Below, one piece after another: positions 18,968 to 59,243 of a stretch of 64,000 bases of DNA; the first letter of the stretch is position 1, and every line of letters begins with the position of its first letter. The stretch comes from Mytilus trossulus. Lineage: Eukaryota. The stretch is taken from contig NC_086376.1 of NCBI RefSeq assembly GCF_036588685.1, forward strand, positions 60,078,001 through 60,142,000, written 5' to 3'. The position numbers and the translations under genes are program-made. Below the pieces are notes generated by a model. The model was not told the DNA's origin and made no database searches. It saw nothing but the letters and a program-made list of their open reading frames with translations.

Positions 18968-19575
18968 GTAAGTTATCTAAAAAAAAAGCAAAATTAAATT
19001 GTTTGCCAAAGATAAAAAAAAAATCAACAGTTCTTGTCTGATTTCACAGTTTAAAAAACTAAAACGTGTTTGAAAACATATACACGTGGTAGTCATCTGG
19101 CATTTGCGTCAGTTGGTATAAATGGCAGCATTAAGAATTATATCCCTATAGAATGTTTGCATTAATATTCATAGTGTGTAAAGTAGTTTACGAAAAATAA
19201 AAAGGTTTCTATTATGATACTGAAATGGCAAATGAGAGAAAGAAAAACATGTTGAACGACGAGGAAATTACATAGATATGGAGGATAATGAACAGCAACG
19301 TATAGAGATTTCCACGTCTTTCAATAGTTTATATCTATATTTTCTTGTTTTAATTTCAATCAGCTCTCCCCTCATACTTGAAGAATATTTCTAAATTTAC
19401 AATTGATTAAAAATTTCAAACTTTGTTGTATCGGTGAGTTATCATGCAAGCCATCAAATATATATATATAGGTAATTTTTGTTGTTGTAACGTTGTTTCT
19501 TTTGATTCATAAAATTCGACCAAAAAGTTACAACTGGCGACAAGCAATCAAAACTATACTGTTTTATCATTTCAG

Positions 19576-20565
19576 GTCACTCTCTTTGGACAAGGCGCTG
19601 GCGCAGTTTCTGTCGCAATACATATGACATCACCAAAATCTTTAGGACTATTTAGAAATGCAATCCTGGAAAGTCTACCTTTCAGTTTACGTCTCAAGAC
19701 TGTAGATCAAGCTAGGTCACAAGGACAAAATTTCTCTTCCAAAGCAGGTTGTTCAGATTTAGAATGTTTACGAAAGAAATCACCATGGGATATTTTAGAT
19801 GCCCAAGTTAAAACTACTTTACCTCTTGGAACCGTATTACAACGATTACGGCAGTGGGGTCCACATGTAGATGGAAACGATGTATCAGGTGACATACAAG
19901 CTGGCTTCCGGTTTGGTCGAGTACATGATATACCCCTTCTGATAGGGACAACAACCGCAGATGGTGCCGACATAGTCTTTAAAACATATCTCGAGCCATT
20001 AAATAATGCAGCTTTTCGTACAATATTAGCACGTTTAAATCCCTCTCATGCTAGATTATGGTATAACTTATACACTCCTCGATCTAATGATGATTCTAGG
20101 CGAGAGTTAACCCAGTTTATCACAGATTTTGTTTATACATGTCCAACAAGGAGTTTTGCTTCTGATATGACTCGAATAAATAATACATGGGTATACGCTT
20201 TCGGTCGGAATATGGATTTTTTAAATGGAAGTGGGATGTCTCCACATTGCGCGATCAGTGCGTGTCATGGTTCAGAACTTGCCTATTTATTCCAGAATAT
20301 CAAAGATTTAGGTTATAATTTTACCATGCCTGACATGCAACTGTCAGACGAAATCTTAATTTACTGGACAAATTTTGCTAAGCTGAATAATCCTAACGGT
20401 AATTTAGACACGACCGACCCTGGAATGTTTAACTGGTACCAATATACAGGCAGGCCTCCAGTCATCCGAGCGGTCCTTGGTATAGGGCATCCACAGTCTT
20501 CAATCCAAACTGATTACAGGGGAACAATCTGTAATATGTTTGATAACAATAACTTTAGAGCTTGA
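19576..20565 (+). CDS. Carboxylesterase-like exon 5 (terminal); spliced CDS 1563 nt = 520 aa; predicted non-catalytic
   Basis: ttcag acceptor; VTLFGQGAGAVSV, AILES, LIGTTTADG, DFVYTCP, ACHGSEL, YWTNFAK; stop TGA 20563-20565. Confidence 0.93.
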   Translation, partial: VTLFGQGAGAVSVAIHMTSPKSLGLFRNAILESLPFSLRLKTVDQARSQGQNFSSKAGCSDLECLRKKSPWDILDAQVKTTLPLGTVLQRLRQWGPHVDGNDVSGDIQAGFRFGRVHDIPLLIGTTTADGADIVFKTYLEPLNNAAFRTILARLNPSHARLWYNLYTPRSNDDSRRELTQFITDFVYTCPTRSFASDMTRINNTWVYAFGRNMDFLNGSGMSPHCAISACHGSELAYLFQNIKDLGYNFTMPDMQLSDEILIYWTNFAKLNNPNGNLDTTDPGMFNWYQYTGRPPVIRAVLGIGHPQSSIQTDYRGTICNMFDNNNFRA

Positions 20566-37718: not shown

Positions 37719-37910
37719 AATTTGGAAATTAGTATGGCGTTCATTATCACTGAACTAGTATATATTTGTTTAGGGGCCAGCTGAAGGACGCCTCCGGGTG
37801 CGGGAATTTCTCGCTACATTGAAGACCTGTTGGTGACCTTCTGCTGTTGTTTTTTTATTTGGTCGAGTTGTTGTCTCTTTGACACATTCCCCATTTCCAT
37901 TCTCAATTTT
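37719..37910 (+). mobile_element. SINE-like interspersed repeat, second copy
   Basis: Near-identical to 22429-22620. Confidence 0.7.
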
Positions 37911-37962
37911 ATCTCATTCTTTTCTGCACGATTGATTGCAAACGTCAAAGACAACGTATTGA

Positions 37963-38200
37963 ATTATAATCCTGGTAACTTTAATAACTATTTACACCAT
38001 TGGGTCGATGCCACTGCTGGTGGACGTTTTGTCGATGGTTTCACCAGCCCAGTAGTCAGCCACTCGGTGTTGGCATGAATATCAATTATATGGCATTTCT
38101 TTTTTTATTAATTTGCTGTTTACAAAACTTTAAATTTTCGAAAAAAACTAAGATTTTCTTATCCCATGAATCGATTACCTTAGCCGCATATGGCACAATT
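37963..38200 (+). repeat. Partial 356-bp-family unit without the hammerhead
   Basis: Matches ~57390-57620 (tgggtcgatgccactgctggtggac...ccagcccagtagtcagc). Confidence 0.75.
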
Positions 38201-39874
38201 TTTGTAAAGAACATTTTAACTGTATTTTCTGATATGTTCCGTAGAAATACTTCTGTAACAAACTTTTCAATTTGTGACTCTCATGTATTCATGTATTCGA
38301 CCATTTCAGTTTCAACCATACACTTAATAAGATGAAATTACCGAATCTGACACATTTTTAAGGCATTTAAACGTAAATGTATTTTCACATCCCGCTCTGC
38401 CGGGAAATCAATGCTTCAACAATTGTTTTATATACAAAAATACGAATTTAAACATTATTTTTTGTGTGTTTTTCTTCTGTTCATCATTCATGTAATGCAC
38501 GTAAAGCTATTTAAAACTACGAAACAAAACAAAAACAACTTTTAAATGATAAGAAAGAATTAACCTCTGCTCTTTTACTGTTTCTGATGCCAATGAAGTA
38601 ATTCAGCAAAGTGAAGTTGAAAGAAAATAGTTTATGTGTTAACTGGCTATTAAACTTCTCATACGTAATTAGCAGCATCTAACAATACACTTGGTTTGTA
38701 CCACAAACAGAACCTTACAAATACAGTGTATACTGAGATAAAATAAAATACGAGTGAATATGACAACGCAGCTATATAGCATGAGTTTTTATATATTTGT
38801 GGCTTTAACGTTCATAATTTCGATATCATGAGACAACAGTGAAACCACAACAAGCCGTTATATCTGATAGTTACATTATAATTCTATAATTCTGACAGAT
38901 TTCATATTTATAGTAGTTACATTATAATTTCATGTCAAAAATTTCGTTGTCTATGACGTTTGCAATTGATCGTGTAGACAAGAATGAGAGCATATTTCTA
39001 ACCAATGACGAGAAGTAACGTTACAAGAGGTTGGGGTATAAAGTATAATGCATGGTAAACATACTCAAAATAGAGTTTTAAAGAAACAAAGGACGTTTCA
39101 GTGATGAAATCATTGTTCTACAATACTATTGCTAAATTCAACACATTGAAACTAGACATCCAATAAAAAGTAAAATCACAAAAATACTGAACTCCGAGGA
39201 AAATTCAATCGGAAAGTCCATAATTAAATGGCAAACTAAAAAGCCCAAAGCTACATCAAAAGAATGGATACCAACAACGATTGTTGATATTATTTCTGTG
39301 AACACAGTTTACCTTTTGATAGAATACACTTTACACGGAAAGTTGCTAGTCTAACCAGGTTTTATGGCTCTCCCGGCTTTACTTCGCGTTTTTCCTATTT
39401 AGGTTATCCTTCATGACAGCATCACTCTTATCTTGTCTCATGTCAATATGATCTCTATCAGGAAAATGCACTGCTCTTTGACACTATAATTGTGATATTG
39501 TAGTTGGATATTCAAAATAGTTCAGCTTTCTAAACAAAAATCTTACATTTTGAAAGGGGGACGTTTTGATAAATGATATTATCATATTCAATTTCAAATC
39601 AAGAAAACAGAAGTCATTAGCTTGACAGAAACCAATAAATCAATCATTCACAGAATATTAACTCCGACAAGACATCTGCTATAATAATCTTTTTTAATTT
39701 TTAAATTCTTTTTTAAGGATCTTGATGTGTATGTAGGGATCATTAAACGAAACAGAGTAAAGATAAATATGTGAACTTTCTTGTTTTGATGTTTCCTTAT
39801 CATTCTAGAAATAATAAGGTTATAATCTGACGGAGGAACAAACTGAAGTCATGTTGACCTGTTTTGAGTTATGA

Positions 39875-40053
39875 AAAAAGTAAAATCACAAAAATACTGA
39901 ACTCCGACGAAAATTCAAAACGGAAAGTCCATAATCAAATGGCAAAATCGAAAGCTCAAACACATCAAACGAATGGATAACACGTTAACTGTCATATTCC
40001 TGACATGGTACATGCATTTGCTTATGTAGAAAATGGTGGATTAAACCTGGTTT
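39875..40053 (+). repeat. ~180-bp interspersed repeat (also ~1465-1595, 25795-25975, 39166-39270 on +; ~8755-8945 on -)
   Basis: aaaatcacaaaaatactgaactccga..aaattcaaaacggaaagtcc..atcaaatggcaaaatc recurs across the window. Confidence 0.75.
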
Positions 40054-40119
40054 TTGATTCTTTAAGTATTTAGTTTAACTTTATACTGATAGTGACTATA
40101 GTTAACTCAACACTTATCA

Positions 40120-42068
40120 TTTTTTATACGACCGCAAATTTTGAAAAAAATTTCGTCGTATATTGCTATCACGTTGGCGTCGTCGTCGTCGTCGTCGTCG
40201 TCGTCCGAATACTTTTAGTTTTCGCACTCTAACTTTAGTAAAAGTGAATAGAAATCTATGAAATTTTAACACAAGGTTTATGACCATAAAAGGAAGGCTG
40301 GTATGGATTTTGGGAGTTTTGGTCCCAACATTTTAGGAATTAAGGGCCAAAAAGGGCCCAAATAAGCATTTTCTTGGTTTTCGCACTATAACTTTAGTTT
40401 AAGTTAATAGAAATCTATGAAATTTTGACACAAGGTTTATAACCACAAAATAAAGGTTGGGATTGATTTTGGGAGTTTTATTTTCAACAGTTTAGGAATT
40501 AGGGGCCAAAAAAGGGCCCAGATAAGCATTATTCTTGGTTTTCGCACTATAACTTTAGTTTAAGTAAATAGAAATCAATGAAATTTAAACATAATGTTTA
40601 TGACAACATAAGGAAGATTGGTATTGATTTTGGGATTTTAGGTCCCAACAGTTTAGGAATTAGGGGCCAAAAAGGGACCCAAATAAGCATTTTTCTTGGT
40701 TTTCGCACCATAACGTTAGTATAAGTAAATAGAAATCTATGAAATTTAAACACAAGGTTAATGACCATAAAAGGAAAGTTAGTATTGATTTTGGGAGTTT
40801 TGGTCCCAACAGTTTAGGAGAAAGGGGCCCAGAGGGTCCAAAATTAAACTTTGTTTGATTTCATCAAAATTGAATTATTGGGGTTCTTTGATATGCCGAA
40901 TCTAACTGTGTATGTAGATTCTTAACTTTTGGTCCCGTTTTCAAATTGGTCTACATTAAGGTCCAAAGGGTCCAAAATTAAACTTAGTTTGATTTTAACA
41001 AAAATTTAATCCTTGGGGTTCTTTGATATGCTAAATCTAAAAATGAACTTAGATTTTTTATTATTGGCCCAGTTTTCAAGTTGGCCCAAATCAGGGTCCA
41101 AAATTAAACTTTTTTGATTTCATCAAAAATTGATAAATGGGGTTCTTTGATATGCCAAGTCTAACTGTGTATGTAGATTCTTCATTTTTGGTCCCGTTTT
41201 CAAATTGGCCTACATTACGGTCCAAAGAGTCCAAAATTAAACTAAGTTTGATTTTAACAAAAATTAAATTCTTGGGCCTCTTTGATATGCTGAATCTAAA
41301 CATGTACTTAGATTTTTGATTATGGGCCCAGTTTTCAAGTTGGTCCAAATCAGGATCTAAAATTATTATATTAAGTATTGTGGAATAGCAAGTCTTTTCA
41401 ATTGCACAGTATTGTGCAATGGCAAGAAATATCTAATTTCACAATATTGTGAAATAGCAATTTTTTTTTTAATTAGAGTTATCTTTCTTTGTCCAAAATA
41501 GTAAGCAAGAAATATCTTATTGCAAGATTTTTTTTTAATTGGAGTTATCTTTCTTTGTCCAGAATCAACTTAAATCTTTGTTATATACAATAAACAATGT
41601 ATATTCACTTTTTACTACCAACTGATAAATTTAAATAATCTTTACCATTCAGTGATAACAAGCAGTTTTTTTACATCATGTATTTAAATGAGTAGTAATT
41701 GTTGCAAACTCCATTAGAATATTTTAATTCAAATTAGTTTTGGAATAAGGGAAAGGGGGATGTGAATAAAAAATTGGGTTAAATTTTTCTCATTTGAAAT
41801 TTCATAAATAAAAAGAAAATTTCTTCAAACATTTTTTTGAGAGGATTAATATTCAACAGCATAGTGAATTGCTCTAAGAGAAAACAAACAATTTAAGTTC
41901 ATTTGAATACATTCATTCTGTGTCAAAAACCTATGCTGTGTCAACTATTTAATCACAATCCAAATTTAGAGCGGAATCCAGCTTGAATGTTGTGTCCATA
42001 CTTGCCCCAACCGTTCAGGGTTCAACCTCTGCGGTCGTATAAAGCTACGCCCTGCGGAGCATCTGGTT
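40120..42068 (+). mobile_element. Non-autonomous Helentron-associated (DINE-1/HINE-like) element, copy 1
   Basis: T-run; subterminal IR TTTATACGACCGCA (40123-40136) / TGCGGTCGTATAAA (42030-42043); partial IR after the left copy; (GTC)n; ~160-bp and ~130-bp internal tandem repeats; 3' hairpin GCTACGC-CCT-GCGGAGC; TT ends; no TSD. Confidence 0.88.
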
Positions 42069-43677
42069 GCATATGTTTTCTTCCAAAAACCACATGAGAT
42101 TTATTTCATCCATTGGGTGCAGATAATGGAGTTAAAACTGCTGACCCTTCAAACTTATTTTAGTTTGTCACCAATTTTTGTTTGGGTTAGTGATGCTCTG
42201 CAATCTTCATTTTATTGTGGACATTCATTTGTTTGTTGGTGACGGTCATTTCCATACTGTTTAATTTGTATTTAATTTTTCTTTTTTTTTTTAATTGTTA
42301 TCTTCTTCCCGCCTTTTTAATAAAAAAAGATGAAGGAATCTGAATTGTACTAAAGGTCCTGGTGATCTTATCTTGCCAGTGTTTACACCTCTTAATTTAT
42401 ATAAACACGAATTGTTCACCTAATTAACATTGGCATAGCTTTATCATTCTGTAAGGGAATGCATCATTTATTTTGATGGGTAGGTTAATTTAGATGTCAG
42501 ATTCCAATTTGACAGGGCTGCAGTTGTTTATAGCACTGTTATGCACATTGCTCCAGAGTCAGTTTTTTTGTACTCTGTTTTTTAACATCCTGTAACAAGT
42601 TGGCAAATCTTTGGCATTTCACACCTCCTGGCCTCCTTATTGAACTCTCAAATCAAATTGTTTGGCAAATGAAGCATAAACTATCTAAAAGGGTCAGCAG
42701 GTCTGTCAATCTTTAGAATGTAACTTACCATTAAAAGGTTATAACATCAAGAAATTTTATTCGAGAATGATGTTAAATTTTCAAAGTTTCTCAGCTCTTA
42801 AATGTATTGACAGCTACCAACCACATTATTTAGTGTCCTCACTTTTAAATAAATAATAATAATAATAATTTTATTTGCAAAAATACACCCATATGGGTCA
42901 AGCAAACACAAATACAACATTTAATATAGACAGATATAAATCTTGTACAACGTACAGTGAAAGCAGCCAATGTCAAAACTTTTTTCTACTTGAAGATTTT
43001 GTTTGAATAAGAAAGCTGTTTGGTATATCCAGGTTATATTATTAAAGGATATTTGCTACAAGTCCTCATACAATAGTTCTGTTTAGACAGGTTTCTTGTT
43101 TACATATTGTTTGCTTTACACAGGTTTTACTGTAATTACATACAAGCAATATCAGCTTCCAACATTAAAAGATATTTTTTTTGGATTTAATGTTTATGTC
43201 TTTGATAAGCTTGATAACTTTGTCTGTATTGGTAGACATGGTAGGTTGGCTCCAGAGGAGTAACCTCCTTAGAGATCACATGGCTTCCTTTTGATACTTG
43301 TTTATATTGAAGAATATTTCAAAGAAAATATCATTTTCAACACCATATTATTATCTCAAGTTAAAAGTATTTGTGACTGTGTCACATTCAAGGTCAAATG
43401 TTAAGTATGACTTTAGACAGTGCCACTTACAAACTTGAGTGTTTGGGTGTGAATTTAGATGTTTAAGAGCCTCTCAGTTGTTACATTCCAAATGACCTGT
43501 TTAATTTGATTGTAATTTCCTCTAATTCTAACCATCAGCTAGCATTTTATGTTTACCCTTGTAAGCTTGGTGTTTTGATAAGCTGAAAAGATATCTAAAT
43601 TTCGTGTACAGCAACTAAAAATTTAACATAGAAAACAGCTGTTGTAACAAACTTTTTTAAATCTTTGTGTTTTGCAG

Positions 43678-43867
43678 TTGGAGGACAACCCACCTTGAAT
43701 GTAGACTTTGAAATGAAGAATACCACCAAGTATAAAGGGGAAATTGTACGTCTCCGTTGTGAGATTTCTGGAAACCCGTTTCCCAAGTACAGTTGGTTCA
43801 AAGACAGCATAGAAATTGGAGATAAAGAGGACCGATTCAATGTGAAATTGACGCCATGGGGTTCAAG
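43678..43867 (+). CDS. Ror: ROR ectodomain exon a: Ig domain, first half
   Basis: (V)GGQPTLNVDFEMKNTTKYKGEIVRLRCEISGNPFPKYSWFKD...KLTPWGS(R); AG/GT; phases 1 to 2. Confidence 0.9.
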
Positions 43868-44839
43868 GTAATAATTTTTTGTATTTTCTTGTAATCTTTC
43901 AACATTGTGTATTTGATTTTTACAAAGATTTGGAAACTGCAGAAGATTGTAATCTTTCAACATTGTATTTTTGATTATTAAAAAGATTTGGAAATTTCAG
44001 AAGATAGTAAAATGAGTGATTGAAAATATAGTTTTAAAGTAAAGGTTAATTTTACTGTTGATGATTTAAACAAAGGAGGGATGCGAGAACATAAAATAAA
44101 CCATTTAGTGGATTAAGATAAATACAAAAATTGTTAAAATAAACTTTTGTTAAGAGTAAGAAAATAAACCAGATGTATTATCTCCTACAGCCTATAGATT
44201 TAAATTAGTCAAAGTAATATGGAGTTAATACAAGGATTATGTGTTTAGGTGAGGGATAGCTATCATCTGGTTGTAAGCAGTTATAAATCTGTTCATGTTG
44301 GCAATATTTAACATCTTTTGTATGTAAAATAAGCAAGCATGTTCGTAGTTTACTTTTTAGGTGTGCAGAAATGTAAACAATTTTTTCGCAAGATAGCAGT
44401 AACTGTTCTTATGCATTTCATTCTTGTAATTTATTTATCCATGAATTACATGCCACTGTACAGAAATGGATTCAAAACAAGCTATAATAGATAAAAAGCA
44501 CTATAACTTCTAATCTTAAATGTTGATGAAAAGACAAAACTAAATATTACAGACAAAAATCATCAAAAGAAGACATTGAAAAATAAATAACTGTTTTCAT
44601 AGTTTACATTATAAGTGCTCGGAACTGTAAACAATTTAATAACAACTGTGGCAACTGTTCTTGTATTTTTCATGCTTGTTGTTTTTTGTATTCTTGAACT
44701 TCATGCCATTGTACAGTAATGGTTTCAAAACAAATAATAACAGTAAATAGCTATTCTGAAAACAAACAAAAACTTAGCTAGGATGCTGAATTATAAAGAA
44801 CATTCAATTAGCAACTTATAAATTTATTTATTTTTTCAG

Positions 44840-44946
44840 ATTGAAGATAGAGAAATCAGTACCCCATGACAGTGGTTATTATATGTGTATAGCTGCTAAC
44901 AGGGCTGGAAACAAAAATGCTACAGCTTATCTACAGATCAAAAATG
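44840..44946 (+). CDS. Ror: ROR ectodomain exon b: Ig domain, second half
   Basis: LKIEKSVPHDSGYYMCIAANRAGNKNATAYLQIKN; DxGxYxC motif; phases 2 to 1. Confidence 0.9.
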
Positions 44947-45641
44947 GTAGGTCAAAGGGGGACAACTATTTTACAACTAAAGTAAATCATAAAGTTCTAA
45001 GATTCAGATTTTTATCTCTCAAACATACTGTTATTTAACAAGACAGTTACTAAGCTTCATGTATTCAGCACTATCACTTTTTTCTTCTTCAGTAATTAAT
45101 TTGAATTCTAGTATTTGCAAGCTTTATCCCATTGCTTTACTATTATCAAAATTAATAGGTATTTAAGATTCAGAATGCAATTTAAATTTCCATTTACAGT
45201 GCCACCACCTGCTTAATTTTAAGGTGGAGTCATACTAAATTATTTCTTTTATCTGTTTGAAAAGCATTAAATTAACATTTAAAAAATATCCCAATATTTA
45301 ATTGTTTTCACCTGCATTCAGCTGATAGTGTCAGAAATAGCTGAACATTTGTTAAGCTATAATGATAATAAGTTGGCTATCATAGTTCAAAGGTTATGGA
45401 GTTTTTAAATTCTTTTATATCTCCATTTGTGTTAAAAAAAACTCTAGTCCATAATAAAAATCTGTTAATGTGTAGTTTTTTGGATCCTCAAGCCACCAAA
45501 TTTTACCATATTATTTTATTTATTTCTAGTTTGTATTTCTTTTCAATTTTCTTATAAAAGATTTAATTTTATATCATTTCATAACCAATTAATACTGATT
45601 TTTACCTCTCTAATATTGTATTTCCACATTTTTTTCCACAG

Positions 45642-45729
45642 AACATCCTCCCAAAAAGGATAACAAGGGTGGAGGATCTAAGACTGATGTGGATTCATCA
45701 TTCCCAGATCTAGGGGATGATACAGATAG
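45642..45729 (+). CDS. Ror: ROR ectodomain exon c: Ig-CRD linker
   Basis: ccacag acceptor; (E)HPPKKDNKGGGSKTDVDSSFPDLGDDTD(R); AG|GTAAGT donor; phases 1 to 2, needed to keep frame between exons b and d. Confidence 0.8.
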
Positions 45730-46920
45730 GTAAGTTCAGTCAATACCAGGAAATATTCCATCTCTGGAATTAAAAGGTTGTTTATTTATACATTTGCATT
45801 CGACAAATGTATTCTTCAAACTGAACAGAATTTGGATTTATTTTAACACATGGTTCAAAGTCTATAAATTGATTATGAAAATAAGAACTCAGTTATTATT
45901 TTTTGTAAATTCTCTATAAATTTCATTTTGAATTAAAAGAAAGTAACAGTAAGAATATTTTTTACTTATCTTCTAATTAAATGAAGAAGTAGAGAAAGAA
46001 AGTGTATAGACTAATCTAAAAATGGTTAAATACTATGACCAAAAAACTTGTCTTAAGTTGCATTTTAAGATGGAAAATTTTCTTTAAAGATTTTCTGGAA
46101 AGTATGATCCAGAAATATATAAAAAGTAAGTAATCATTTTAATGGATTGAGGGTTTGCATGGCTTCTATTTACATTTTTTATCTTTTAATTATACTTTTT
46201 CCCTGACTATTTGTAGGATTTCATACACACTCTTTATATAGTTTTGATTGCTAGTGCTTTAAATTTTAATTTGTGAAAGATTTTTTGATTTTTTAATTGC
46301 AAATTATGAGGGGTCAGCAAGCATTTGCAGCTCTGCCACCCATCTTTTTGAATTAGTACATAAAAATTGAAAAAAAATCTGTGTAAATAGAAGCACATAT
46401 GAAATCCCAATTCTTAATTGTATCTATATATTGTCATCCTGCTTTTTGGCTATTCTGCGGCAGTCATTCATATGTTTATATATATTTTGATGGCTTGCAC
46501 TTGCCTTTTGTGAATTTTCTGTGTTTTCAATTACACTGCATTCACTATCCTCTTCTTTAAAAACTAATTCTATGTAAAATATTTCATCTTGCAGTGACTA
46601 GATCTGATATAAAATATTATTAAACCTGTATAATAATGGTAAAGAGCACGCAAAAGAAGAAAAATATTTAGAAATTATAAAAAACATTGCAAGATGAAAT
46701 TATTAAATTCTGTACATTTTTAGCTCTAATGTGAATCAATATTAATTTTCTATTTGTAACAATACTGTATTGAGTTAGCTTCAAGCTAATTTTTCTCAAG
46801 CTTTTTCCTAATAATGCTTTGCATAATAATTTTCATGTTCTTACTCTAAATGTAACAACTAATAAGACTATTATACAAGAGCTGTTGATCTTTACAATAT
46901 GCAATTAACCCATGATACTA

Positions 46921-47370
46921 TACAGTTAACCTGTACATGAGCAAACCTTTACACTAAATAGTTAACATTTGCCCAATGGAGTTAACCTTTACATTATACA
47001 GTTAACCTTGACACTTTATAGTTAACCTTGACACTTTATAGTTAACCTTTACACTATGACAGTTAACCTCTCACTATACAGTTTACCTTTACCTTTACAC
47101 TATACAGTTTACCTTGACACTTTATAGTAAACCTTTAAACTACAACAGTTAACCTTTACACTATATAGTTAACCTTGACACTATACAGTTAACCTTGACA
47201 CTTTATAGTTAACCTTGACACTATACAGTTAACCTTGACACTTTATAGTTAACCTTTACACTATAACAGTTAACCTCTCACTATACAGTTTACCTTTACC
47301 TTTACACTATAAAGTTAACCTTTACACTTCAGTTAACCCTTACACTAGTTAACCTTCACACTATACAGTT
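46921..47370 (+). repeat. 20-bp minisatellite
   Basis: About 20 units of gttaacctt(g/t)acact(a/t)ta(c/t)a. Confidence 0.92.
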
Positions 47371-48098
47371 ATACAGATTGAAACTAATTTAGTAGCATAT
47401 ACATGGCATAAATATGATATATTCATAAAAAATTATAAAACAAAAAAGACAGAAGAGGACATAAGACTTCAGACAATCAGTTGCACAAATTTGTAAATTG
47501 ATAGAAATGCACCATTCAAATCTTTTAATTATGAATATTTCAAATGTGTAATTTACTTTGATTTGACATAATTTACTAGTTTCATAGTTTATTAAAGAAA
47601 GCTCAGCCGTAGAAGACTGTGTAACAGGAGCATATTATACACAATATAAATCGCAACATATTTCATAATACATACAGCATACATTTTTGAATTATACATC
47701 TGAAATATGTATGTTGTACATTTGTATGCTCATATTATTTTTAAAGCATGTTGAATTTTGTGATAGTTTTTAGTTTGTGTATAAATGCATAAAGGCAAAT
47801 GCTTGCTGTTATCTGATCTTTACATACATTATACCTTAGAATAGAAATGGATATCAAAGAAACTATGAACAGGTTTCTCATTTATGGGAGGAAAGACATA
47901 TTTTAAGAGAAACATGTCAAATAAATGTATAAAATTGGGAAATAACATGTAAAATAGATGAACCAATCTGTTATGGTGATCGTATTATAATTGTCAATAC
48001 ATTATTAAAAAAAAATCATCTTTCCTAGCTGGCAAAATGATTTTAATGATAATATGGAGAAGAAAGAGATTAGAATTTCTGAATACTAACTTTTACAG

Positions 48099-48250
48099 AT
48101 TGAAAGAGGAAAGCAGTGGCAGTACTAAAGATGACAGCAATGGTTTCTGTCAACCGTTTCGAGGAAACATGTGTGCCAGGTTTATAGGCAATCAGACAAT
48201 TTATGTCAATTCTGAGTATGCTCAAGGTGTAAAGGAAGAAAAATTTATTG
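48099..48250 (+). CDS. Ror: ROR ectodomain exon d: Frizzled-like CRD start
   Basis: GFCQPFRGNMCARFIGNQTIYV, compared with vertebrate ROR1 [21 protein letters not shown] (recalled from memory); phases 2 to 1. Confidence 0.93.
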
Positions 48251-48777
48251 GTATGTATGAATTAGCAGTGGCAGAGTCAACACTTTTATCAACAATTTAT
48301 ACATGTTTTTCTGGGAAAGATTAGGGTCTGAAACTAGGAACCTGCATTCATTGCTTCAAAAAGTGGGGGTATACGGTTTTACCTCTGTCTGTCCAACCGT
48401 TATATAAATATTTTTTATCCCATGTTCTCCACTTTGATCAAGTGCTCTAAAGATAGAAACAAATGAAGCAAGATTAAATTTACAATTAATTGGCTTAAGT
48501 TTTATATCTACAGATGGATCACTTAGGCAAACTGACAGTGTCAACTAAGTAAAATTAAAAGATCTCCCTGATTGGGTTTTGGTCATGCAATGGGAAATTG
48601 GCCTATTTCCTTTTTTCCTGCTTCATGATTTATCTAAGGTACCAATCAGCTTTTACATGTTTAGATACTTTTTAGCTAATACTGTCATAGTAGAATGAAA
48701 AAGAGAATTGATGTTAAAAGGGACATAACTCAAAAAATGTACTGTGTAAGTAAAATATTGTATTGCAATCTTTTCAG

Positions 48778-48987
48778 CTGCTTTTACTGTGATTGCTGCC
48801 TCCAGTGATATGTCAGCTGAATGTCAGAAGTATGCCATAGAATTTCTATGTTTCTACACCTTCCCTTTATGTGATCGTCAACATATCAACCCTACCCCTC
48901 GTAAAGTCTGCAGAGACGAGTGTGAAATGCTAGAGGGCACTATCTGTAAAAAGGAATATGTCATTGGTCGACACCATCCAATGATTG
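48778..48987 (+). CDS. Ror: ROR ectodomain exon e: CRD core
   Basis: AAFTVIAASSDMSAECQKYAIEFLCFYTFPLCD...PRKVCRDECEMLEGTICKKEY; ROR CRD cysteine pattern; phases 1 to 1. Confidence 0.93.
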
Positions 48988-49747
48988 GTAAGTTTGCTGT
49001 TATATGGGTTGATATCTGATTATTGGAATATGATTTAAAAGTGGCCCTTTTTAATATGATGTACTGGTTCTTTTGGAGTACCCTTTGTTGTTCTTTTTTT
49101 TACCTTGATTTGTATTGTCTGAATTTATTTATGAGATTTGGACATCTGTTAACACCTGGTGCCTCTAGTTTTTTTAACTGAAATAACCTCTGATCTTTGT
49201 TAAAAAGTGAACACTTCTTGTAACATTCAATTAGAAGGAATACATGTAAAATCTTTTGTAAATAACTTCAAACAGACTTCAAACTGTTTCAGATGTAGTT
49301 ATATGGTTCAGTTTTGTTAACAGTTTGAAGGTTTTAAATACCAAAGCTCCTGACAATTATGTGTATAATAAAAAAACAAGGGATGTAGTGTGACAATTGG
49401 CTGTTTCAGAATCTAAAGCATCATGAGTAATTTCATTGTTCATACCCAAAAGTGAAAAGAACGTTATGTTATTGAATTTCCATTGTTTATAACGTTTTAA
49501 ACCAATCAAAACACTTTAGTGTACGTTTTTGAAAATATTACCCAGAATGCATTAGATTCTGAAACAGCGAATTCATGATGTTTAACCCTCTGGGCACTTG
49601 ACATAACCCAAAGCAATAGAACAGCACTTTAACTGCTATTCTTCATCTAGAAGTCATAATGAGACATAAAAATGGATCAAAAGCACATACATAACTCAGA
49701 ACTAGTAGTATCATTTGCATAATTAAAATATTTTTTTTTGTTTTTAG

Positions 49748-49855
49748 GAGAAGGTTTCCTTCCAAAGTGCTATGACTTACCACCAAGAGGTACCCCAGAG
49801 GGGGATAAATGTAAAGGTATTAATGTACCCATTGATCCTACACAACGACCAGAAG
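49748..49855 (+). CDS. Ror: ROR ectodomain exon f: CRD end
   Basis: (G)EGFLPKCYDLPPRGTPEGDKCKGINVPIDPTQRPE; LPxCxxLP motif; phases 1 to 1. Confidence 0.9.
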
Positions 49856-50464
49856 GTATGTCACATCCTTATAGAAAATTATTGTTTCGTTTTTTGGTGG
49901 TTTTTTTTAGTTGTGATTCACAAAATTGAAAAATTATGAAGTCAAGTATACCAGTCAAAGATTCTTTTGTTAATAATTATAGAAGCTATTCAGTTTGTAC
50001 TGAAAGGTTTTCAAAAAAAAGCTAGTTGTTGAAACACAAATTGCTTGATTTATGTTATTTGTAAAGTACATTGTACTATTGATAATCTGAAGAACACTTA
50101 AACTAATGCATTATAAACAATATATGGAAATTGTCATTAATAACACCACTAAAAGTTAGGTAACAGTACAATGAAAAAGCTTGATGAAATATTGGCAAAT
50201 TAAAGGAGAAAACTTGTTTTATAACTTTTTATTTTTTTTAATTAACGCTACATCTGTTAAAAGTTTCCATTCAATCAGAATTAAAATGGTAGACAATGAT
50301 ATGCCTAGTCAGACACTATACATTGTGATTATATTTTATTTTATTTTCAGACTTCTGTATTATGTATTTGCAAAAAGGAATTGTAACACGATTTTATACC
50401 TTCCTCTAATATCAATATATTGTGTGAATTTCTATGCTTATTTACTGTTTCCTTGTTTTTTAAG

Positions 50465-50590
50465 TTCACACATGTTATGGTGGTAATGGCATGAAATACA
50501 AAGGATCTATCAATCACAGTCGGTCTGGAAGGCCGTGTATGAACTGGAAAAATAATCCACATTTTAAAGGCAGTGAATATCCTGATCTAG
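50465..50590 (+). CDS. Ror: ROR ectodomain exon g: Kringle, first half
   Basis: (V)HTCYGGNGMKYKGSINHSRSGRPCMNWKNNPHFKGSEYPDL; CYxGxGxxYxG..SGxxCxxW motif; phases 1 to 1. Confidence 0.9.
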
Positions 50591-51456
50591 GTTAGTGGAT
50601 GATAAACAATTAAGAAAACAGACATCTATATGCCAAAAAGAGGCTTAAAACAAAGGCATCATCCATAAATTAAGCAGTGACTACCAAAGATGTGTATTGA
50701 GCAATTGTTTCTCTTGTAACTTCTTTTAGATTACTATAAGACTGACTTTATCTTCACATATGTTTAAAAAATAAAAGATTTCATCAAACATTAATGACAG
50801 TTTATTCAAACAAAATTCAACAAAAAAAGGATGAGTAAAGGGTGGCATACATGATCAACAAGCATCTTTGTCATAATCTAGCTCTTTATCACTGTAAAAA
50901 TGAGACATTAAAATCTAAATTGACAAAAACAAAATAGTACAGACATTGGGTTTAACTTGGGACAGACACATTAATTTATGTCTGAGTAAGAAAGTTTTTG
51001 TTGGTATAATCATCATATATCTGTATATTGATAAGTTTAGATTATTTCTATTCCATTCATGATCTATATATCATTCAGTGAAGCAAAACAAAGTTTTCTC
51101 TGCCCTGATAACAGGATTGCATAATATATTTTAACTACATTAAAATATCTTTATAACTGGTCTGAAACATGTAAAGATTTTTCAAATCACACAAAATTCT
51201 GGTTTTCCTGTCAATGTAAAATATAAATATGCTCATCTGATTTCATTCTCATTTTGCTCTCATGTCAAAAACATATGCATATGAGTATTTAAAATATTTT
51301 GGTCCGATTCATGTTCATGTTGAAAAGATTAGGGTTTTGACTGAGATTGGTGAACTGAACATGAAAATGTGATTGTGGGAGCAGGACATTGGTATCACCT
51401 ATGGAGTTGTATGGACACATATTCTTGTTTTTTGTTATATTACATTTATTTTATAG

Positions 51457-51561
51457 GAAACCATCACCTGTGTAGAAACCCAAATGGTACATATACAGGA
51501 CCATGGTGCTATACCGACCCTTCATATCATCATACAGAATTATGTGATATCCCTAAATGTG
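51457..51561 (+). CDS. Ror: ROR ectodomain exon h: Kringle, second half (last ROR exon seen)
   Basis: (G)NHHLCRNPNGTYTGPWCYTDPSYHHTELCDIPKC; CRNP..PWCYT motif; donor G|GTATGT, phase 1. Confidence 0.93.
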
Positions 51562-51568
51562 GTATGTA

Positions 51569-51820
51569 TTTTTATGCCCCTGTTGTAGCTGAGGAGGCAT
51601 TAAGTTTTACCCTTATCTGTATGTTTGTCCATCAATACGTCAGGATTGATTTCCATTCTCTAACTTTAGTTTGCCTCAACCAAATATTTTGAAACTTATA
51701 CACAATGTTTTTTACCAAAAAACTCAGTTCAAGTACAAAATTTGGATTGCATCACTTTTACAGGTCTTGAGTTATTTCCCTTTATAACATTACATGCACG
51801 AGGATCATCTGTGTCTCATT
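51569..51820 (+). mobile_element. Older, decayed HINE-like fragment
   Basis: Begins tttttatgcccc, followed by a decayed GTCY-like tract and a tctctaactttagt segment resembling the HINE internal repeat. Confidence 0.45.
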
Positions 51821-52001
51821 TATTTTAAAATCAAAAAGTTGAAGTTTATGGCAGGGATCATCTTGATCATTGTTCAAGACAGTCAACTATCAAAATGAAG
51901 TGCTGCAATAAAAGCACTGTTCCTATGATAACTGGTTATATGTTATTATTTCATGAGATTGTTGTCTTAGTACATCCATCTTGTATTCCAGATTTTCTTG
52001 A

Positions 52002-52057
52002 TTTTTATACGACCGCAAATTTTGAAAAAATTTTCGTCGTATATTGCTATCACGTTG

Positions 52058-52089
<32 letters not shown>

Positions 52090-53966
52090 CGAATACTTTT
52101 AGTTTTCGCACTCTAACTTTAGTAAAAGTGAATATAAATCTATAAAATTTTATCACAAGGTTTATGACCACAAAAGGAAGGTTGCTATTGATTTTGGGAG
52201 TTTTGGTCCCAACATTTTAGGAATTAGGGGCCAAAAAGGGCCCAAATAAGCATTTTCTTGGTTTTCGCACTATAACTTTAGTTTAAGTTAATAGAAATCT
52301 ATGAAATTTTGACACAAGGTTTATGACCACAAAAGAAAGGTTGGGATTGATTTTGGGAGTTTTGGTTTCAACAGTGTAGGAATTAGGGGCCACAAAAGGG
52401 CCCAAATAAGCATTATTCTTGGTTTTCGCACAATAACTTTAGTTTAAGTAAATAGAAAATAATGAAATTTAAACACAATGTTTATGACCACAAAAGGAAG
52501 GTTGTTATTGATTTTGGGAGTTTAGGTCACAACAGTTTAGGAATTAGGGGCCAAAAAGGGACCCAAATAAGCATTTTTCTTGGTTTTCGCACCATAACTT
52601 TAGTATAAGTAAATAGAAATCTATGAAATTAAACACAAGGTTTATGACCATGAAAGGAAGGTTGGTAATGATTTTGGGAGTTTTGGTCCCAACAGTTTAG
52701 GAATGAGGGACCCAAAGGGTCCAAAATTAAACTTTGTTTGATTTCATCAAAATTGAATAATTGGGGTTCTTTGATATGCCGAATCTAATTGTGTATGTAG
52801 ATTTTTAACTTTTGTCCCTTTTTCAAATTGGTCTACATTAAGGTCCAAAGGGTCCAAAATTAAAATTCGTTTGATTTTGACAAAAAATTAATCGTTTGTG
52901 TTCTTTGATATGCTGAATCTAAAAATGTACTTAGATTCTTGATTATAGGCCCAGTTTTCAAGTTGGTCCAAATCGGGGTCCAAAATTAAACTTTGTTTGA
53001 TTTCATCAAAACTTGAATAAATGGGGTTCTTTGATATGCCAAATCTAACTGTGTATGTAGATTCCTCATTTTTGGTCTTGTTTTCAAATTGGTCTACATT
53101 AAAGTCCAAAGGGTCCAAAATTAAACTTAGTTTGATTTTAACAAAAATTGAAATCTTGGGGTTCTTTGATATGCTGAATCCAAACATGTACTTAGATTTT
53201 TGATTATGGGACCAGTTTTCAAGTTGGTCCAAATCAGGATCTAAAATTATTATATTAAGTTTTGTGCAATAGCAAGTCTTTTCAATTGCACAGTATTGCG
53301 CAATGGCAAGAAATATCTTATTGCAAAATATTGTGAAATAGCAATTTTGTTTTTAATTAGAGTTATCTTTCTTTGTCCAGAATAGTAAGCAAGAAATATC
53401 TAATTTTAAGAATTTTTTTTATTTGGAGTTATCTTTCTTTGTCCAGAATCAACTTAAATCTTTGTTATATATACAATATACAATGTATATTCACTTTTTA
53501 CTACCAACTGATAAATTAAAATAATCTTTACCATTCAGTGAAAACAAGCAGTTTTTTTACATCTTAATATTTTATGATGTATTTAAATGAGTAGTTATTG
53601 TTGCAAACTCCATTAGAAATTTTAATTAAGATTAGTTTTGGAATAAGGGAAAGGGGGATGTGATTAAAAAAATTGGGTTCAATTTTCTCATTTGAAATTT
53701 CATAAATAAAAAGAAAATTTCTTCAAACATTTTTTGGAGAGGATTAATATTCAACAGCATAGTGAATTGCTCTAAGAGAAAACAAAAATTTTAAGTTCAT
53801 TAGAACACATTCATTCTGTGTCAGAAACCTATGCTGTGTCAACTATTTAATCACAATTCAAATTTAGAGCTGAATCCAGCTTGAATGTTGTGTCCATACT
53901 TGCCCCAACCGTTCAGGGTTCAACCTCTGCGGTCGTATAAAGCTACGCCCTGCGGAGCATCTGGTT
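52002..53966 (+). mobile_element. Non-autonomous Helentron-associated (DINE-1/HINE-like) element, copy 2
   Basis: Colinear with 40120-42068, same orientation and termini; differs by scattered substitutions and small indels. Confidence 0.88.
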
Positions 53967-55560: not shown

Positions 55561-55658
55561 GTGCACCATTTTTAAACTACGATTCTTTGACCATTACTTC
55601 TATAAAAGGAAAGCACGTTGTATTACCCTGTGTCGTCAAAAACTTAGGATTTTCTAGT
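55561..55658 (+). CDS. Lachesin/IgLON/DIP-like gene: Ig1, first half
   Basis: tttgtag acceptor; (G)APFLNYDSLTITSIKGKHVVLPCVVKNLGFSS; GTAAGT donor; phases 1 to 0. Confidence 0.87.
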
Positions 55659-56984: not shown

Positions 56985-57340
56985 GTATCTATGATATGAA
57001 GGACGAGACAAAATCCCATTAAACAAACCATCGAAAAAACCTGGTGCAAAACTAAATTTATGAAACAATTTTGTTAAGTTTTATTTCATCGGTTACGATT
57101 CGTCCCCGAGGGTATCACCAGCCCAGTAGTCAGCACTTCGGTGTTGACATGAATATCAATTATATGGTCATTTTTGATAAATTTTCTGTTTACAAAACTT
57201 TGAAATTTTCGAAAAACTAAGGATTTTCTTACCCCAGGAGTAGATTACCTTAGCCGTATTTGGCACAACTTTTTGGAATTTTGGGTCCTCAATGCTCTTC
57301 AACTTTGTATTTGTTTTGATTTTTTACTATTTTGATCGGA

Positions 57341-57384
57341 GCGTCACTGATGAGTCTTATGTAGACGAAACGCGCGTCTGGCGT
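57341..57384 (+). ncRNA. Type I hammerhead ribozyme 1
   Basis: gcguca-CUGAUGA-gucu-uaugu-agac-GAA-acgcgcgu-C/-uggcgu; GUC triplet, predicted cut after 57378; palindromic stem III. Confidence 0.88.
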
Positions 57385-57696
57385 ATAAAATTATAATCCT
57401 GGTACATTTGATAACTATTTACACCACTGGGTCGATGCCACTTCTGGTGGACGATTCGTCCCCGAGGGTATCACCAGCCCAGTAGTCAGCACTTCGGTGT
57501 TGACATGAATATCAATTATATGGTCATTTTTGATAAATTTTCTGTTTACAAAACTTTGAATTTTTCGAAAAACTAAGGATTTTCTTACCCCAGGAGTAGA
57601 TTACCTTAGCCGTATTTGGCACAACTTTTTGGAATTTTGGGTCCTCAATGCTCTTCAACTTTGTATTTGTTTTGATTTTTTACTATTTTGATCGGA

Positions 57697-57740
57697 GCGT
57701 CACTGATGAGTCTTATGTTGACGAAACGCGCGTCTGGCGT
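57697..57740 (+). ncRNA. Type I hammerhead ribozyme 2
   Basis: Same core; stem II guc/gac. Confidence 0.85.
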
Positions 57741-58052
57741 ATAAAATTATAATCCTGGTACATTTGATAACTATTTACACCACTGGGTCGATGCCACTGC
57801 TGGTGGACGATTCGTCCCCGAGGGTATCACCAGCCCAGTAGTCAGCACTTCGGTGTTGACATGAATATCAATTATATGGTCATTTTTGATAAATTTTCTG
57901 TTTACAAAACTTTGAATTTTTCGAAAAACTAAGGATTTTCTTAGCCCAGAAGTAGATTACCTTAGCCGTATTTGGCACAACTTTTTGGAATTTTGGGTCC
58001 TCAATGCTCTTCAACTTTGTATTTGTTTTGATTTTTTACTATTTTGATAGGA

Positions 58053-58096
58053 GCGTCACTGATGAGTCCTATGTAGACGAAACGCGCGTCTGGCGT
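58053..58096 (+). ncRNA. Type I hammerhead ribozyme 3
   Basis: Same core; stem II guc/gac. Confidence 0.85.
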
Positions 58097-59243
58097 ATAA
58101 AATTATAATCCTGGTACATTTGATAACTATTTACAGCGAACTTTTAGTACTTGTGACCACAATTCAAGTGGTGTCATTACTTTTTGCCATGACGTTGTCA
58201 GTTCGTCTTCGGCGTATGAGTTTGAATATCCCTTTGGTAACGTCCGGCTTACATTAACAATTCTAAATTTCAAGCGAATTTTATTTTCATTCCATTAAAT
58301 GAGGCGTTAAGGATAAAAGACAATCACTGAGATGTATCTACATCTTACTATTTAAACGCAGCTTAATTAAAAAAATAGATTTCTTTATAGTATTTAACAA
58401 AAAAAGGATTCTGAAAAAAAAATGATATCTTTAAAAGAAGATATGAAAGTGCAAACTTACTTATCTTTATTTAGAATCTAATTTGTTTATGTTTTCAAAA
58501 CAAAACCAGAAAAAGAACACATAAACATGATAAAACTCAACGGTTTAAAAATACACTCACTTTGCTTGATTGTTAAGTTCTTAGATTGATTGTAAAATTC
58601 TTGAATTGATTGTAAAATTCTTATCTTTACGGCTATTCTATGTAGTTTACAATGTGATAAAGATATCAAAGGCATTTAAAATTATCTTTTGTTAAGTAAT
58701 GATTGAATAAGGAAATTTTAAAGGTCAGAAAATAAAACGAAACATTTGATATCACTTTCTTTTCTAAAAACCATAAAGTTTATATATTTTTTGCATTAAT
58801 GTAATTGTTCCGACAGGTATGATGATTTAATCGAGTTAATCTCATCCGAAAAAATTGACAGTGATAAAAGAAACTTTGGCACGATAAGACTTCTATCTTC
58901 CAATGAAGAAAAAAAATATTTCTGTTATATATTATACAAACAAGAGGCTTACTGCAGTAACTCCATTATCTCCTGTAACGGCATTTAATTGAAGTGATAG
59001 TTATGTTAGTTCTGTTGACTTTGGTACAATTTCTTACAAAGACAAACTCATCTTACAAGATTTCCATAAAAGGGATTGTTTCTTTCATAGAAACATTCCA
59101 ACAAATTGTTCTTACGGTTAATTGATATAAAAGTAAAGAGATGGGGTATAATTGCCAATAAGACACACATCAGAAAAAGTTAAATGAAATAGATGTAGGC
59201 TTACGGACACCATCCTGATTAAGTTGGCCATTAAGAAAAAGTA

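What the first reader, a model, noticed from the sequence alone, without database searches (positions are those of the whole stretch)
40120..53966. ROR ectodomain cassette bracketed by two direct Helentron/DINE-like elements inside another gene's intron
Seen: eight intact ROR Ig-CRD-Kringle exons (43678-51561) lie wholly between two full-length, same-orientation ~1.95-kb HINE copies. I found no ROR transmembrane or kinase exon after the Kringle; the next exons belong to an unrelated Lachesin/IgLON-like gene. Known: ROR continues into TM + kinase, and rolling-circle elements (Helitron/Helentron) can carry flanking host DNA and insert without a TSD. Inference: the 13.8-kb unit moved as a composite element (outer ends of two copies), or as a circle excised and reintegrated by HINE-HINE recombination, copying a piece of the ROR gene with its introns. 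The two copies differ by substitutions and indels (copy 1 lacks ~13 nt near 41678), consistent with separate insertions rather than a target duplication.
Basis: partly seen in the sequence, partly recalled or inferred. Interest (0 to 1): 0.95.

Follow-up and report, generated by a model that had tools for sequence, protein, structure and literature searches.

The report
ROR gene fragment captured between HINEs
In a mussel genome, a 10-kb piece of the ROR receptor gene (all its extracellular-domain exons, introns included) has been copied to another chromosome, where it sits exactly between two copies of a rolling-circle transposon; this is a clean example of how such elements can move exon cassettes, but it is not shown that the copy is used.

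Summary
Two full-length, same-orientation copies of a high-copy Helentron-type non-autonomous element (HINE; 40121-42068 and 52002-53966, 94.6% alike) bracket a 9.9-kb intron-containing copy of nine ROR exons (Ig, Frizzled CRD, Kringle).

The complete ROR gene, with its TM+kinase exon, lies on another chromosome (C1, about 13.34 Mb). Homology to it begins at the first base after the 3' terminus of HINE copy 1. It ends in ROR's last intron, about 200 bp before copy 2. The block keeps its parent's CpG depletion (0.19, against 0.8 around it).

This is a DNA-level transduplication bounded by rolling-circle element ends. End-bypass or composite Helentron transposition explains it best, and HINE-HINE recombination is the main rival. 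The donor locus in this assembly carries no HINE, and no empty allele could be examined.

All frames and splice sites are intact. The cassette is phase 1-1 and a multiple of three in length. Exon differences to the parent are 20 synonymous to 3 non-synonymous. A same-strand three-Ig gene with a phase-1 acceptor starts 1.6 kb downstream.

Neither transcription of the copy nor chimeric splicing was shown. "Inside another gene's intron" is unproven.

This is a known kind of event and a new, well-resolved case in a mussel.

The parts
40121..42068 (+). HINE copy 1. Full-length Helentron-type non-autonomous element with, in order: 5' T-run, 11-nt subTIR, complementary IR, (CGT)n microsatellite, 161-bp and ~260-bp central tandem repeats, 3' subTIR, and a 3' palindrome 8 nt from the end.
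   Evidence: It differs from the consensus of nine other full-length copies fetched (98-99% alike) by 2.2% substitutions.
42069..51800 (+). Block copied from the ROR gene on C1 (C1:13345099-13354519, minus strand). It runs from the intron before the Ig exon to the last intron. Identity to the parent is patchy, 69-99.7%.
   Evidence: CpG o/e is 0.19 here, 0.20 in the parent block and 0.8 in the C4 flanks.
43678..43867 (+). ROR exon, Ig domain first half. Phase-1 acceptor.
44840..44946 (+). ROR exon, Ig domain second half.
45642..45729 (+). ROR linker exon.
46090..46125 (+). 36-nt alternative micro-exon (present in ROR isoform X4), conserved in the copy.
48099..48250 (+). ROR exon, start of the Frizzled CRD.
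48778..48987 (+). ROR exon, Frizzled CRD core.
   Evidence: Fz, E = 2e-9.
49748..49855 (+). ROR exon, end of the CRD.
50465..50590 (+). ROR exon, Kringle first half.
51457..51561 (+). ROR exon, Kringle second half. It ends in phase 1. If unspliced, the frame runs 47 codons into the intron and stops.
49395..49569 (.). 175-bp MITE with terminal inverted repeats and an AATT target duplication. It inserted in this copy's lineage, and the C1 parent shows the exact empty site.
51569..51820 (+). 5' end and one ~160-bp monomer of a second HINE-like family, lying just after the Kringle exon's donor site. It is also present in the parent intron, so it predates the copying. Homology to the parent fades out inside it.
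51821..52001 (+). About 180 bp found nowhere else in the assembly. It may be donor-allele intron sequence or filler.
   Evidence: It is present in organism B (run X2), joined to the preceding repeat.
52002..53966 (+). HINE copy 2, full length and in the same orientation. It is more diverged: 4.2% substitutions from the consensus of those nine fetched copies.
55561..55655 (+). First Ig-domain exon of the downstream three-Ig gene. Its acceptor is phase 1, so it is frame-compatible with the end of the Kringle exon.

Best explanation
The 13.85-kb unit at 40121-53966 is a gene-fragment transduplication made by the rolling-circle (Helentron) transposition machinery.

Proposed sequence of events:
1. 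A HINE (copy 1) sat in a T-run of the ROR intron about 1.5 kb upstream of the Ig exon on chromosome C1.
2. Transposition began at its 5' end and failed to stop at its own 3' palindrome.
3. It copied 9.7 kb of ROR: nine exons with their introns.
4. It ended in one of two ways. It may have stopped at the 3' end of a second HINE in ROR's last intron (composite transposition). Or it may have stopped at a new end and integrated in the T-run in front of a HINE already resident on C4.
5. The product integrated without target duplication in a T-run on C4, upstream of a three-Ig gene and on the same strand.

Shown: the two element copies with exact termini, the parent locus, the exact 3'-end/ROR junction, the foreign CpG signature, and the intact in-frame cassette.

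Inferred: that a HINE once sat at the donor site, that the machinery read through it, and which of the two termination variants applied.
For: - Both copies are complete members of a high-copy family with defined ends and HINE architecture. The defining features come from PMC4067079 and PMC7492417.
- Homology to the C1 ROR locus begins at 42069, the first base after copy 1's 3' terminus, with no ambiguity beyond the shared termini.
- C1 carries the TM+kinase exon 460 bp beyond the end of homology. The window has none, which fixes the direction as C1 to C4.
- CpG o/e is 0.19 in the block, 0.20 in the parent and 0.8 in the C4 flanks.
- The outer flanks are unique in the genome, so nothing beyond the HINEs was duplicated.
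- The donor breakpoint abuts a TTTT run, which is the family's target type. Two nested copies show insertion in T-runs without a TSD.
- The genome holds at least 100 Helitron_like_N matches, many inside intact 2,000-3,100-aa frames.
- 3'-end bypass with transduction is shown experimentally for Helraiser (PMC4778049). Thomas et al. proposed end bypass or composite transposition for DINE-1/HINE-associated gene duplications.
Against: - The C1 locus in this assembly has no HINE within 70 kb.
- Its sequence at the breakpoint differs by one base (a C) from a perfect empty site for the observed junction.
- The last ~200 bp before copy 2 has no counterpart at C1.
- No autonomous partner sharing these termini was identified.
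- The composite exists once in the genome, so there is no sign that it transposed as a unit more than once.
Confidence: 0.6

Rival explanations
1. Homology-dependent transfer between HINE copies. A double-strand break in a HINE resident on C4 was repaired from the ROR locus, where two HINEs flanked the block. Alternatively, a circle excised by HINE-HINE recombination integrated into the resident HINE. Either route leaves HINE-block-HINE without any transposase step.
For: - The two HINEs are in direct orientation.
- They share 4-5 variants not seen in nine other copies.
- Repeat-mediated ectopic recombination is the published explanation for several DINE-1-flanked new genes in Drosophila (PMC2211543, listed).
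- Divergence from the consensus of the nine other fetched copies is equal in the two HINEs at their outer parts and unequal in the middle.
Against: - It also needs two HINEs at the donor, and none is present there.
- Both inner junctions are exact element termini with the normal T counts, as expected for ordinary insertions.
- The unequal middle segments are the tandem-repeat region, where alignment is unreliable.
Confidence: 0.22
2. Assembly artefact. The block is the second haplotype of the C1 ROR locus, carrying two polymorphic HINE insertions, and was wrongly joined into a solo HINE on C4.
For: - Both boundaries fall in a 2-kb high-copy repeat.
- The block's divergence from C1 is patchy (69-99.7%), like deep allelic lineages.
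- Low pN/pS is what alleles of a working gene would show.
- Diagnostic exon sites are not locus-specific across Mytilus.
- No read spanning a whole HINE was examined.
Against: - The window has no N, so two contig-level mis-joins 12 kb apart would be needed.
- In run X1 the parent-type Kringle-exon unitig has depth 45.8 and the window-type 19.9. That is about three haploid copies rather than two, but it is weak evidence because unitig depth is not a copy number.
- Unitigs identical to the window cross 52001/52002 and 53966/53967, by 24 and 22 nt only.
- The supposed haplotype would stop exactly short of the kinase exon.
Confidence: 0.08
3. The copy is an inert by-product: a young, unexpressed gene fragment that will decay. 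This is a functional reading and is compatible with any of the mechanisms above.
For: - No protein model with a ROR ectodomain but no kinase, or fused to Ig domains, exists for any annotated Mytilus. The only partial models lie on the ROR contig itself.
- No start or signal-peptide exon was copied.
- RNA contigs could not be assigned to the copy, and the downstream Ig exons were silent in the two RNA runs.
Against: - All nine exons, all splice sites and the frame are intact.
- Only one private amino-acid change (L to F) occurs in ~355 codons, against 9% synonymous and 5.6-8% intron divergence from the parent.
- If the copy were unconstrained, that allows at most about 0.6% neutral divergence since constraint was lost.
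Confidence: 0.55

Closest known systems
HINE / DINE-1-like non-autonomous Helentrons, including the bivalve elements Cg_HINE, pearl/CvE and MgE (Thomas et al. 2014, PMC4067079; Vojvoda Zeljko et al. 2020, PMC7492417)
   Same: - An 11-nt subTIR sits a few nt from the 5' end.
- A complementary IR and a microsatellite lie in the left flank.
- There are ~160-bp and ~260-bp central tandem repeats.
- The 3' subTIR starts 38 nt from the end, followed by a short palindrome.
- Termini are oligo-T, insertion is in T-runs without a TSD, and copy number is very high.
   Different: Here two copies act, or appear to act, as the outer ends of a 13.85-kb unit that carries 9.9 kb of host gene. Such capture by HINEs was proposed but not documented in those papers. 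The autonomous partner was not linked here.
Helitron 3'-end bypass transduction and composite capture (Helraiser, PMC4778049; maize and bat Helitrons)
   Same: Host DNA starts exactly at the element's 3' terminus. The capture is at DNA level, with introns. There is a single new insertion without a TSD. The captured fragment holds several exons of one gene.
   Different: The element is of Helentron type, not a canonical Helitron (T-run target, subTIRs). The captured stretch is long and ends at, or next to, a second complete element. The donor locus no longer shows the element.
DINE-1-flanked new and chimeric genes in Drosophila (Yang et al. 2008, PMC2211543)
   Same: A dispersed partial gene duplicate is flanked by copies of a Helentron-derived repeat. 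It is placed next to another gene, with potential for a chimeric product.
   Different: Those cases were attributed to ectopic recombination. Here the exact coincidence with a complete 3' terminus favours a transposition-type junction. Expression of a chimera is not shown here.
ROR receptor tyrosine kinases (Mytilus ROR1-like, XP_071177130 cluster)
   Same: The Ig, Frizzled-CRD and Kringle exons are 94-100% identical in protein to Mytilus ROR.
   Different: The copy lacks the signal-peptide exons and the TM+kinase exon, so it cannot be a ROR receptor. At most it encodes an ectodomain.

Membership tests
HINE (non-autonomous Helentron) | 12-15-bp (in oysters 11-12-bp) subterminal inverted repeats: the 5' one 2-4 nt from the end, the 3' one 38-60 bp from the end. 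| tested here: met
   An 11-nt subTIR follows four to five T at the 5' end. Its complement starts 38 nt from the 3' end. Both features are the same in 12 copies.
HINE (non-autonomous Helentron) | Left-flank IR complementary to the subTIR, plus a microsatellite. | tested here: met
   The 5' 55 nt fold as a hairpin pairing subTIR with IR (z = -3.0; none of 200 shuffles folds as well). A (CGT)n run follows.
HINE (non-autonomous Helentron) | Short palindrome 8-35 bp from the 3' terminus. | tested here: met
   A 3+3-bp stem with one internal mismatch ends 8 nt from the end. The fold itself is not better than shuffles (z = -0.9).
HINE (non-autonomous Helentron) | Central tandem repeats in fixed orientation. 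| tested here: met
   161-bp and ~260-bp direct repeats occur in both copies.
HINE (non-autonomous Helentron) | Insertion in T-rich or TT sites without target-site duplication. | tested here: met
   Two copies nested in other copies (L017, L026) give empty sites. The T counts fit insertion inside a T-run with no duplication. This rests on two cases only.
HINE (non-autonomous Helentron) | An autonomous Helentron (Rep/helicase/endonuclease) sharing the termini. | not testable with these tools
   Rep-helicase frames are abundant and intact, but the DNA around them could not be fetched. An earlier unchecked note (s1-827242) reports such a pair elsewhere in this genome.
Rolling-circle 3' transduction / composite capture | Captured host DNA begins exactly at the element's 3' terminus, and a parent locus exists. 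| tested here: met
   Position 42069 corresponds to C1:13354519. The parent has the missing kinase exon.
Rolling-circle 3' transduction / composite capture | The element is present at the donor site. | tested here: not met
   No HINE lies within 70 kb at the C1 locus of this assembly.
Rolling-circle 3' transduction / composite capture | An empty target site shows that the whole unit inserted at once. | not testable with these tools
   The flanks are unique in the assembly.
ROR receptor tyrosine kinase | Ig + Frizzled CRD + Kringle ectodomain. | tested here: met
ROR receptor tyrosine kinase | Transmembrane segment and tyrosine-kinase domain. | tested here: not met
   The window has none. The only ROR-type kinase exon in the genome is on C1.
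IgLON/lachesin-like (downstream gene) | Three Ig domains, a signal peptide and a GPI anchor. | tested here: inconclusive
   Exons for three Ig domains are present. The signal-peptide exon and C-terminus were not found. The feature search gave only generic I-set clusters.

The most novel reading that the evidence does not exclude
The captured cassette is a working exon-shuffling product. Its nine exons form a phase 1-1 unit of 1,122 nt (1,086 without the micro-exon). They lie on the same strand as a three-Ig gene whose first Ig exon has a phase-1 acceptor, 4 kb downstream. They could therefore be spliced between that gene's leader exon and its Ig exons, giving a Wnt-binding CRD-Kringle module on an IgLON-like adhesion molecule. 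Alternatively they could be read out as a secreted ROR decoy. In either case the cassette has been kept by purifying selection since a Helentron delivered it.
Probability: 0.2. Interest if true: 0.85.

Novelty: new member of a known kind. Interest (0 to 1): 0.55.

Why it matters
Gene-fragment capture by canonical Helitrons is well documented. For the Helentron/HINE branch, which dominates bivalve and Drosophila repeat landscapes, capture has mostly been inferred from association.

Here every piece is visible at base resolution:
- the complete elements;
- the exact 3'-end/host junction;
- the intact parent gene on another chromosome;
- a compositional fossil (CpG depletion) marking the imported DNA.

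The cargo is a whole, frame-symmetric extracellular module of a Wnt co-receptor, set down just upstream of an Ig-superfamily gene. This makes it a concrete, testable candidate for TE-driven domain shuffling. It may also be one source of the gene presence/absence variation for which mussels are known.

Tried and rejected
- **Mis-join that removed the block from the true ROR locus:** rejected. C1 keeps its own block, and the two blocks differ by 5-8% plus indels.
- **Retro-copy:** rejected, because the introns are retained.
- **HINEs inserted after an unrelated segmental duplication:** rejected, because homology stops exactly at a terminus and the outer flanks are unique.
- **C4 as the donor:** rejected. 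It lacks the leader and kinase exons, and its CpG content is foreign to its surroundings.
- **One HINE recently duplicated into two:** rejected. The two are 94.6% alike, which is less than either is to other copies.
- **Chimeric or truncated ROR-ectodomain proteins in public annotation:** none found.
- **RNA support:** contigs of two presumed RNA runs carry spliced Kringle-region exons. The sites that separate copy from parent in this genome are not locus-specific, because M. edulis ROR carries the copy's state. No Kringle-to-Ig joint was listed, and the Ig exons were uncovered. The result is inconclusive.
- **Ortholog of the downstream Ig gene:** the search was swamped by giant multi-Ig proteins, and the Atlas look-up gave only generic I-set clusters.
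- **Signal-peptide exon by heuristic scan:** nothing between 53967 and 55560, and only weak candidates upstream.
- **Joined sequences:** Exons were searched one by one by reference. Only a few codons around each junction were joined, inside a script, to place splice sites.

Full report
**What is there**

The window is G000:C4:60078001-60142000 of a 1.3-Gb genome with 14 chromosome-sized contigs and no N in the window. Its ROR protein is 99% identical to Mytilus ROR1-like proteins.

Two direct repeats, 40121-42068 and 52002-53966, align end to end at 94.6-95% identity. They belong to a very abundant family. A search with copy 1 gave 7,423 first-look candidates. Of the 40 scored, most align over positions 1-1948 at 94-97%. 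Twelve copies share the same first and last bases, with unrelated flanks.

The anatomy matches HINEs as defined by Thomas et al. 2014 (PMC4067079) and for oysters by Vojvoda Zeljko et al. 2020 (PMC7492417):
- oligo-T ends;
- an 11-nt subterminal inverted repeat;
- a complementary IR that folds with it (z = -3.0);
- a (CGT)n microsatellite;
- 161-bp and ~260-bp central tandem repeats;
- a 3' subTIR starting 38 nt from the end;
- a small palindrome 8 nt from the end.

Two copies nested inside other copies supply empty sites. These show insertion inside T-runs without target duplication.

**The cargo**

Between the two elements lie nine ROR exons on the + strand, with canonical and conserved splice sites and no stop. 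Searched one at a time by reference, they hit Ig, Fz and Kringle.

The window has no TM or kinase exon. In the whole genome the ectodomain exons occur only here and on C1, and the only ROR-type kinase exon is on C1.

**The parent and the junctions**

The 9.9-kb interval matches C1:13345099-13354519 (minus strand) at 87-96% in BLAST pieces. On C1 the Kringle exon is followed after a 674-bp intron (about 460 bp beyond the end of homology) by a 1.67-kb exon encoding the TM segment, kinase and tail. The leader exons lie 12-21 kb or more upstream of the copied part.

Homology starts at window 42069, the base after the last T of copy 1. At that point C1 reads a TTTT run, then one C, then the shared sequence. 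The donor breakpoint therefore abuts the family's preferred target, but it is one base off a perfect empty site.

On the right, homology declines after the Kringle exon. It runs through the 5' end and one monomer of a different HINE-like family that both loci share, and it is lost near 51790-51820. The next ~180 bp occurs nowhere else in the assembly and runs up to the exact 5' end of copy 2.

The outer flanks are unique apart from a ~185-bp dispersed repeat at about 39870-40055. The C1 locus has no copy of this HINE within 70 kb.

**Direction and independence**

CpG o/e is 0.19 in the block, 0.20 in the parent block, 0.28 upstream of the block on C1, and about 0.8 on both sides on C4.

The two blocks differ by 5.6-8% in aligned non-exon DNA, with very uneven identity (69-99.7%) and several indels. 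One indel is a 175-bp MITE at 49395-49569, for which C1 is the exact empty site.

Against nine other full-length copies fetched, which are 98-99% alike, copy 1 shows 2.2% substitutions and copy 2 shows 4.2%. The two share four or five variants absent from the other nine. They are old, related, but separate copies.

**Mechanism**

A junction at a complete 3' terminus, a multi-exon intron-containing cargo, unique outer flanks and a T-run target all point to rolling-circle transduction. Helraiser bypasses its 3' hairpin in about 12% of events and carries flanking DNA (PMC4778049). Thomas et al. suggested end bypass or composite transposition for HINE/DINE-1-associated duplications. The genome carries many intact Rep-helicase frames.

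I could not separate three variants:
- (a) Two HINEs in the donor were mobilised as one unit.
- (b) Copy 1 plus read-through ended de novo and landed in the oligo-T in front of a resident copy 2.
- (c) Homology-directed transfer occurred between HINEs.

All three need at least one HINE at the donor that the assembled C1 haplotype lacks.

A misplaced second haplotype is unlikely for three reasons. It would need two contig-level mis-joins in gap-free sequence. Unitigs identical to the window reach across both right-hand junctions, by 24 and 22 nt only. At the Kringle exon the parent-type unitig is about twice as deep as the window-type (45.8 against 19.9), which suggests three haploid copies and a hemizygous insert. 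This is weak evidence, because unitig depth is not a copy number.

**Is the copy used?**

The exons differ from the parent at 24 of the 1,084 nt compared. At that point one exon end (48250, entered as 48246) and another (48987, entered as 48989) were slightly misplaced, and the micro-exon was left out; it carries one further, synonymous difference. Of the differences, 20 are synonymous and 3 non-synonymous, giving pN/pS of about 0.04.

Polarised with four Mytilus species, only one amino-acid change (L to F in the Ig domain) is private to the copy. So either the cassette is constrained, or it was copied very recently from an allelic lineage already about 5% away from the assembled C1 allele. 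The patchy identity, and the fact that M. edulis ROR carries the copy's state at one "diagnostic" site, fit the second option.

The cassette is frame-symmetric: it has a phase-1 acceptor, a phase-1 end, and a length that is a multiple of three. The first Ig exon of the downstream same-strand three-Ig gene has a phase-1 acceptor at 55561, so a read-through fusion would be in frame.

The evidence stops there:
- No such joint was listed in two presumed RNA runs, and the Ig exons were uncovered in them.
- Spliced Kringle-region contigs cannot be assigned to the copy.
- No matching protein model exists in public annotation.
- No leader exon was found. A carboxylesterase exon lies at 19513-20562 (+).

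Whether the unit sits in an intron of the Ig gene or in front of it is therefore open.

**Limits**

- The single representatives search was uninformative.

**Verdict**

This is a real, precisely bounded HINE-bracketed transduplication of the ROR ectodomain. The kind of event is known, and the case is new and unusually clean. Its functional status is unresolved.

Noticed in passing
window 19513-20562 (+): A 350-codon open frame matches the C-terminal two-thirds of the carboxylesterase family (PF00135, E = 5e-43). An upstream same-strand gene therefore ends about 20 kb before the composite.
   Followed up: partly
window 49395-49569: A 175-bp MITE with terminal inverted repeats and an AATT target duplication. 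It belongs to a high-copy family (88-92% identity to copies on all large contigs). The C1 ROR intron is its exact empty site.
   Followed up: yes
window 51569-51820; L029, L030: A second HINE-like family begins 8 nt after the Kringle exon's donor site, in both ROR copies. Its ~160-bp monomer forms tandem arrays at other loci.
   Followed up: partly
window 39870-40055: A ~185-bp dispersed repeat (3,905 first-look candidates, 88-91% identity) lies just left of HINE copy 1. It is not related to the MITE at 49395.
   Followed up: partly
window 37785-38332 and 57056-58105: The same repeated open-frame peptides occur at both places. The second place is the hammerhead/retrozyme-like array noted earlier (s1-827086), so a further copy of that repeat lies upstream of the composite.
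   Followed up: no
window 46934-47349: An array of 20-bp-period repeats inside a ROR intron. It differs in length between the copy and the parent (87-bp indel).
   Followed up: no
G000 genome-wide: At least 100 Helitron_like_N matches, many inside uninterrupted frames of 2,000-3,100 codons, several in near-identical clusters. This suggests recently active autonomous rolling-circle elements.
   Followed up: partly
proteins P0148/P0302 and P0142 (M. galloprovincialis, one 332-kb contig): Two separate gene models on one contig both contain the CRD-Kringle exons, with different residues. One model ends right after the Kringle exon. This could be a local duplication or an uncollapsed haplotype at the ROR locus of that assembly.
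   Followed up: no
window 44907-44909 and its C1 counterpart: Both ROR copies of this genome have G where M. edulis, M. galloprovincialis, M. californianus and M. coruscus have A (motif RA[G/A]NKNA). This is a shared derived state, or the result of gene conversion between the copies.
   Followed up: no
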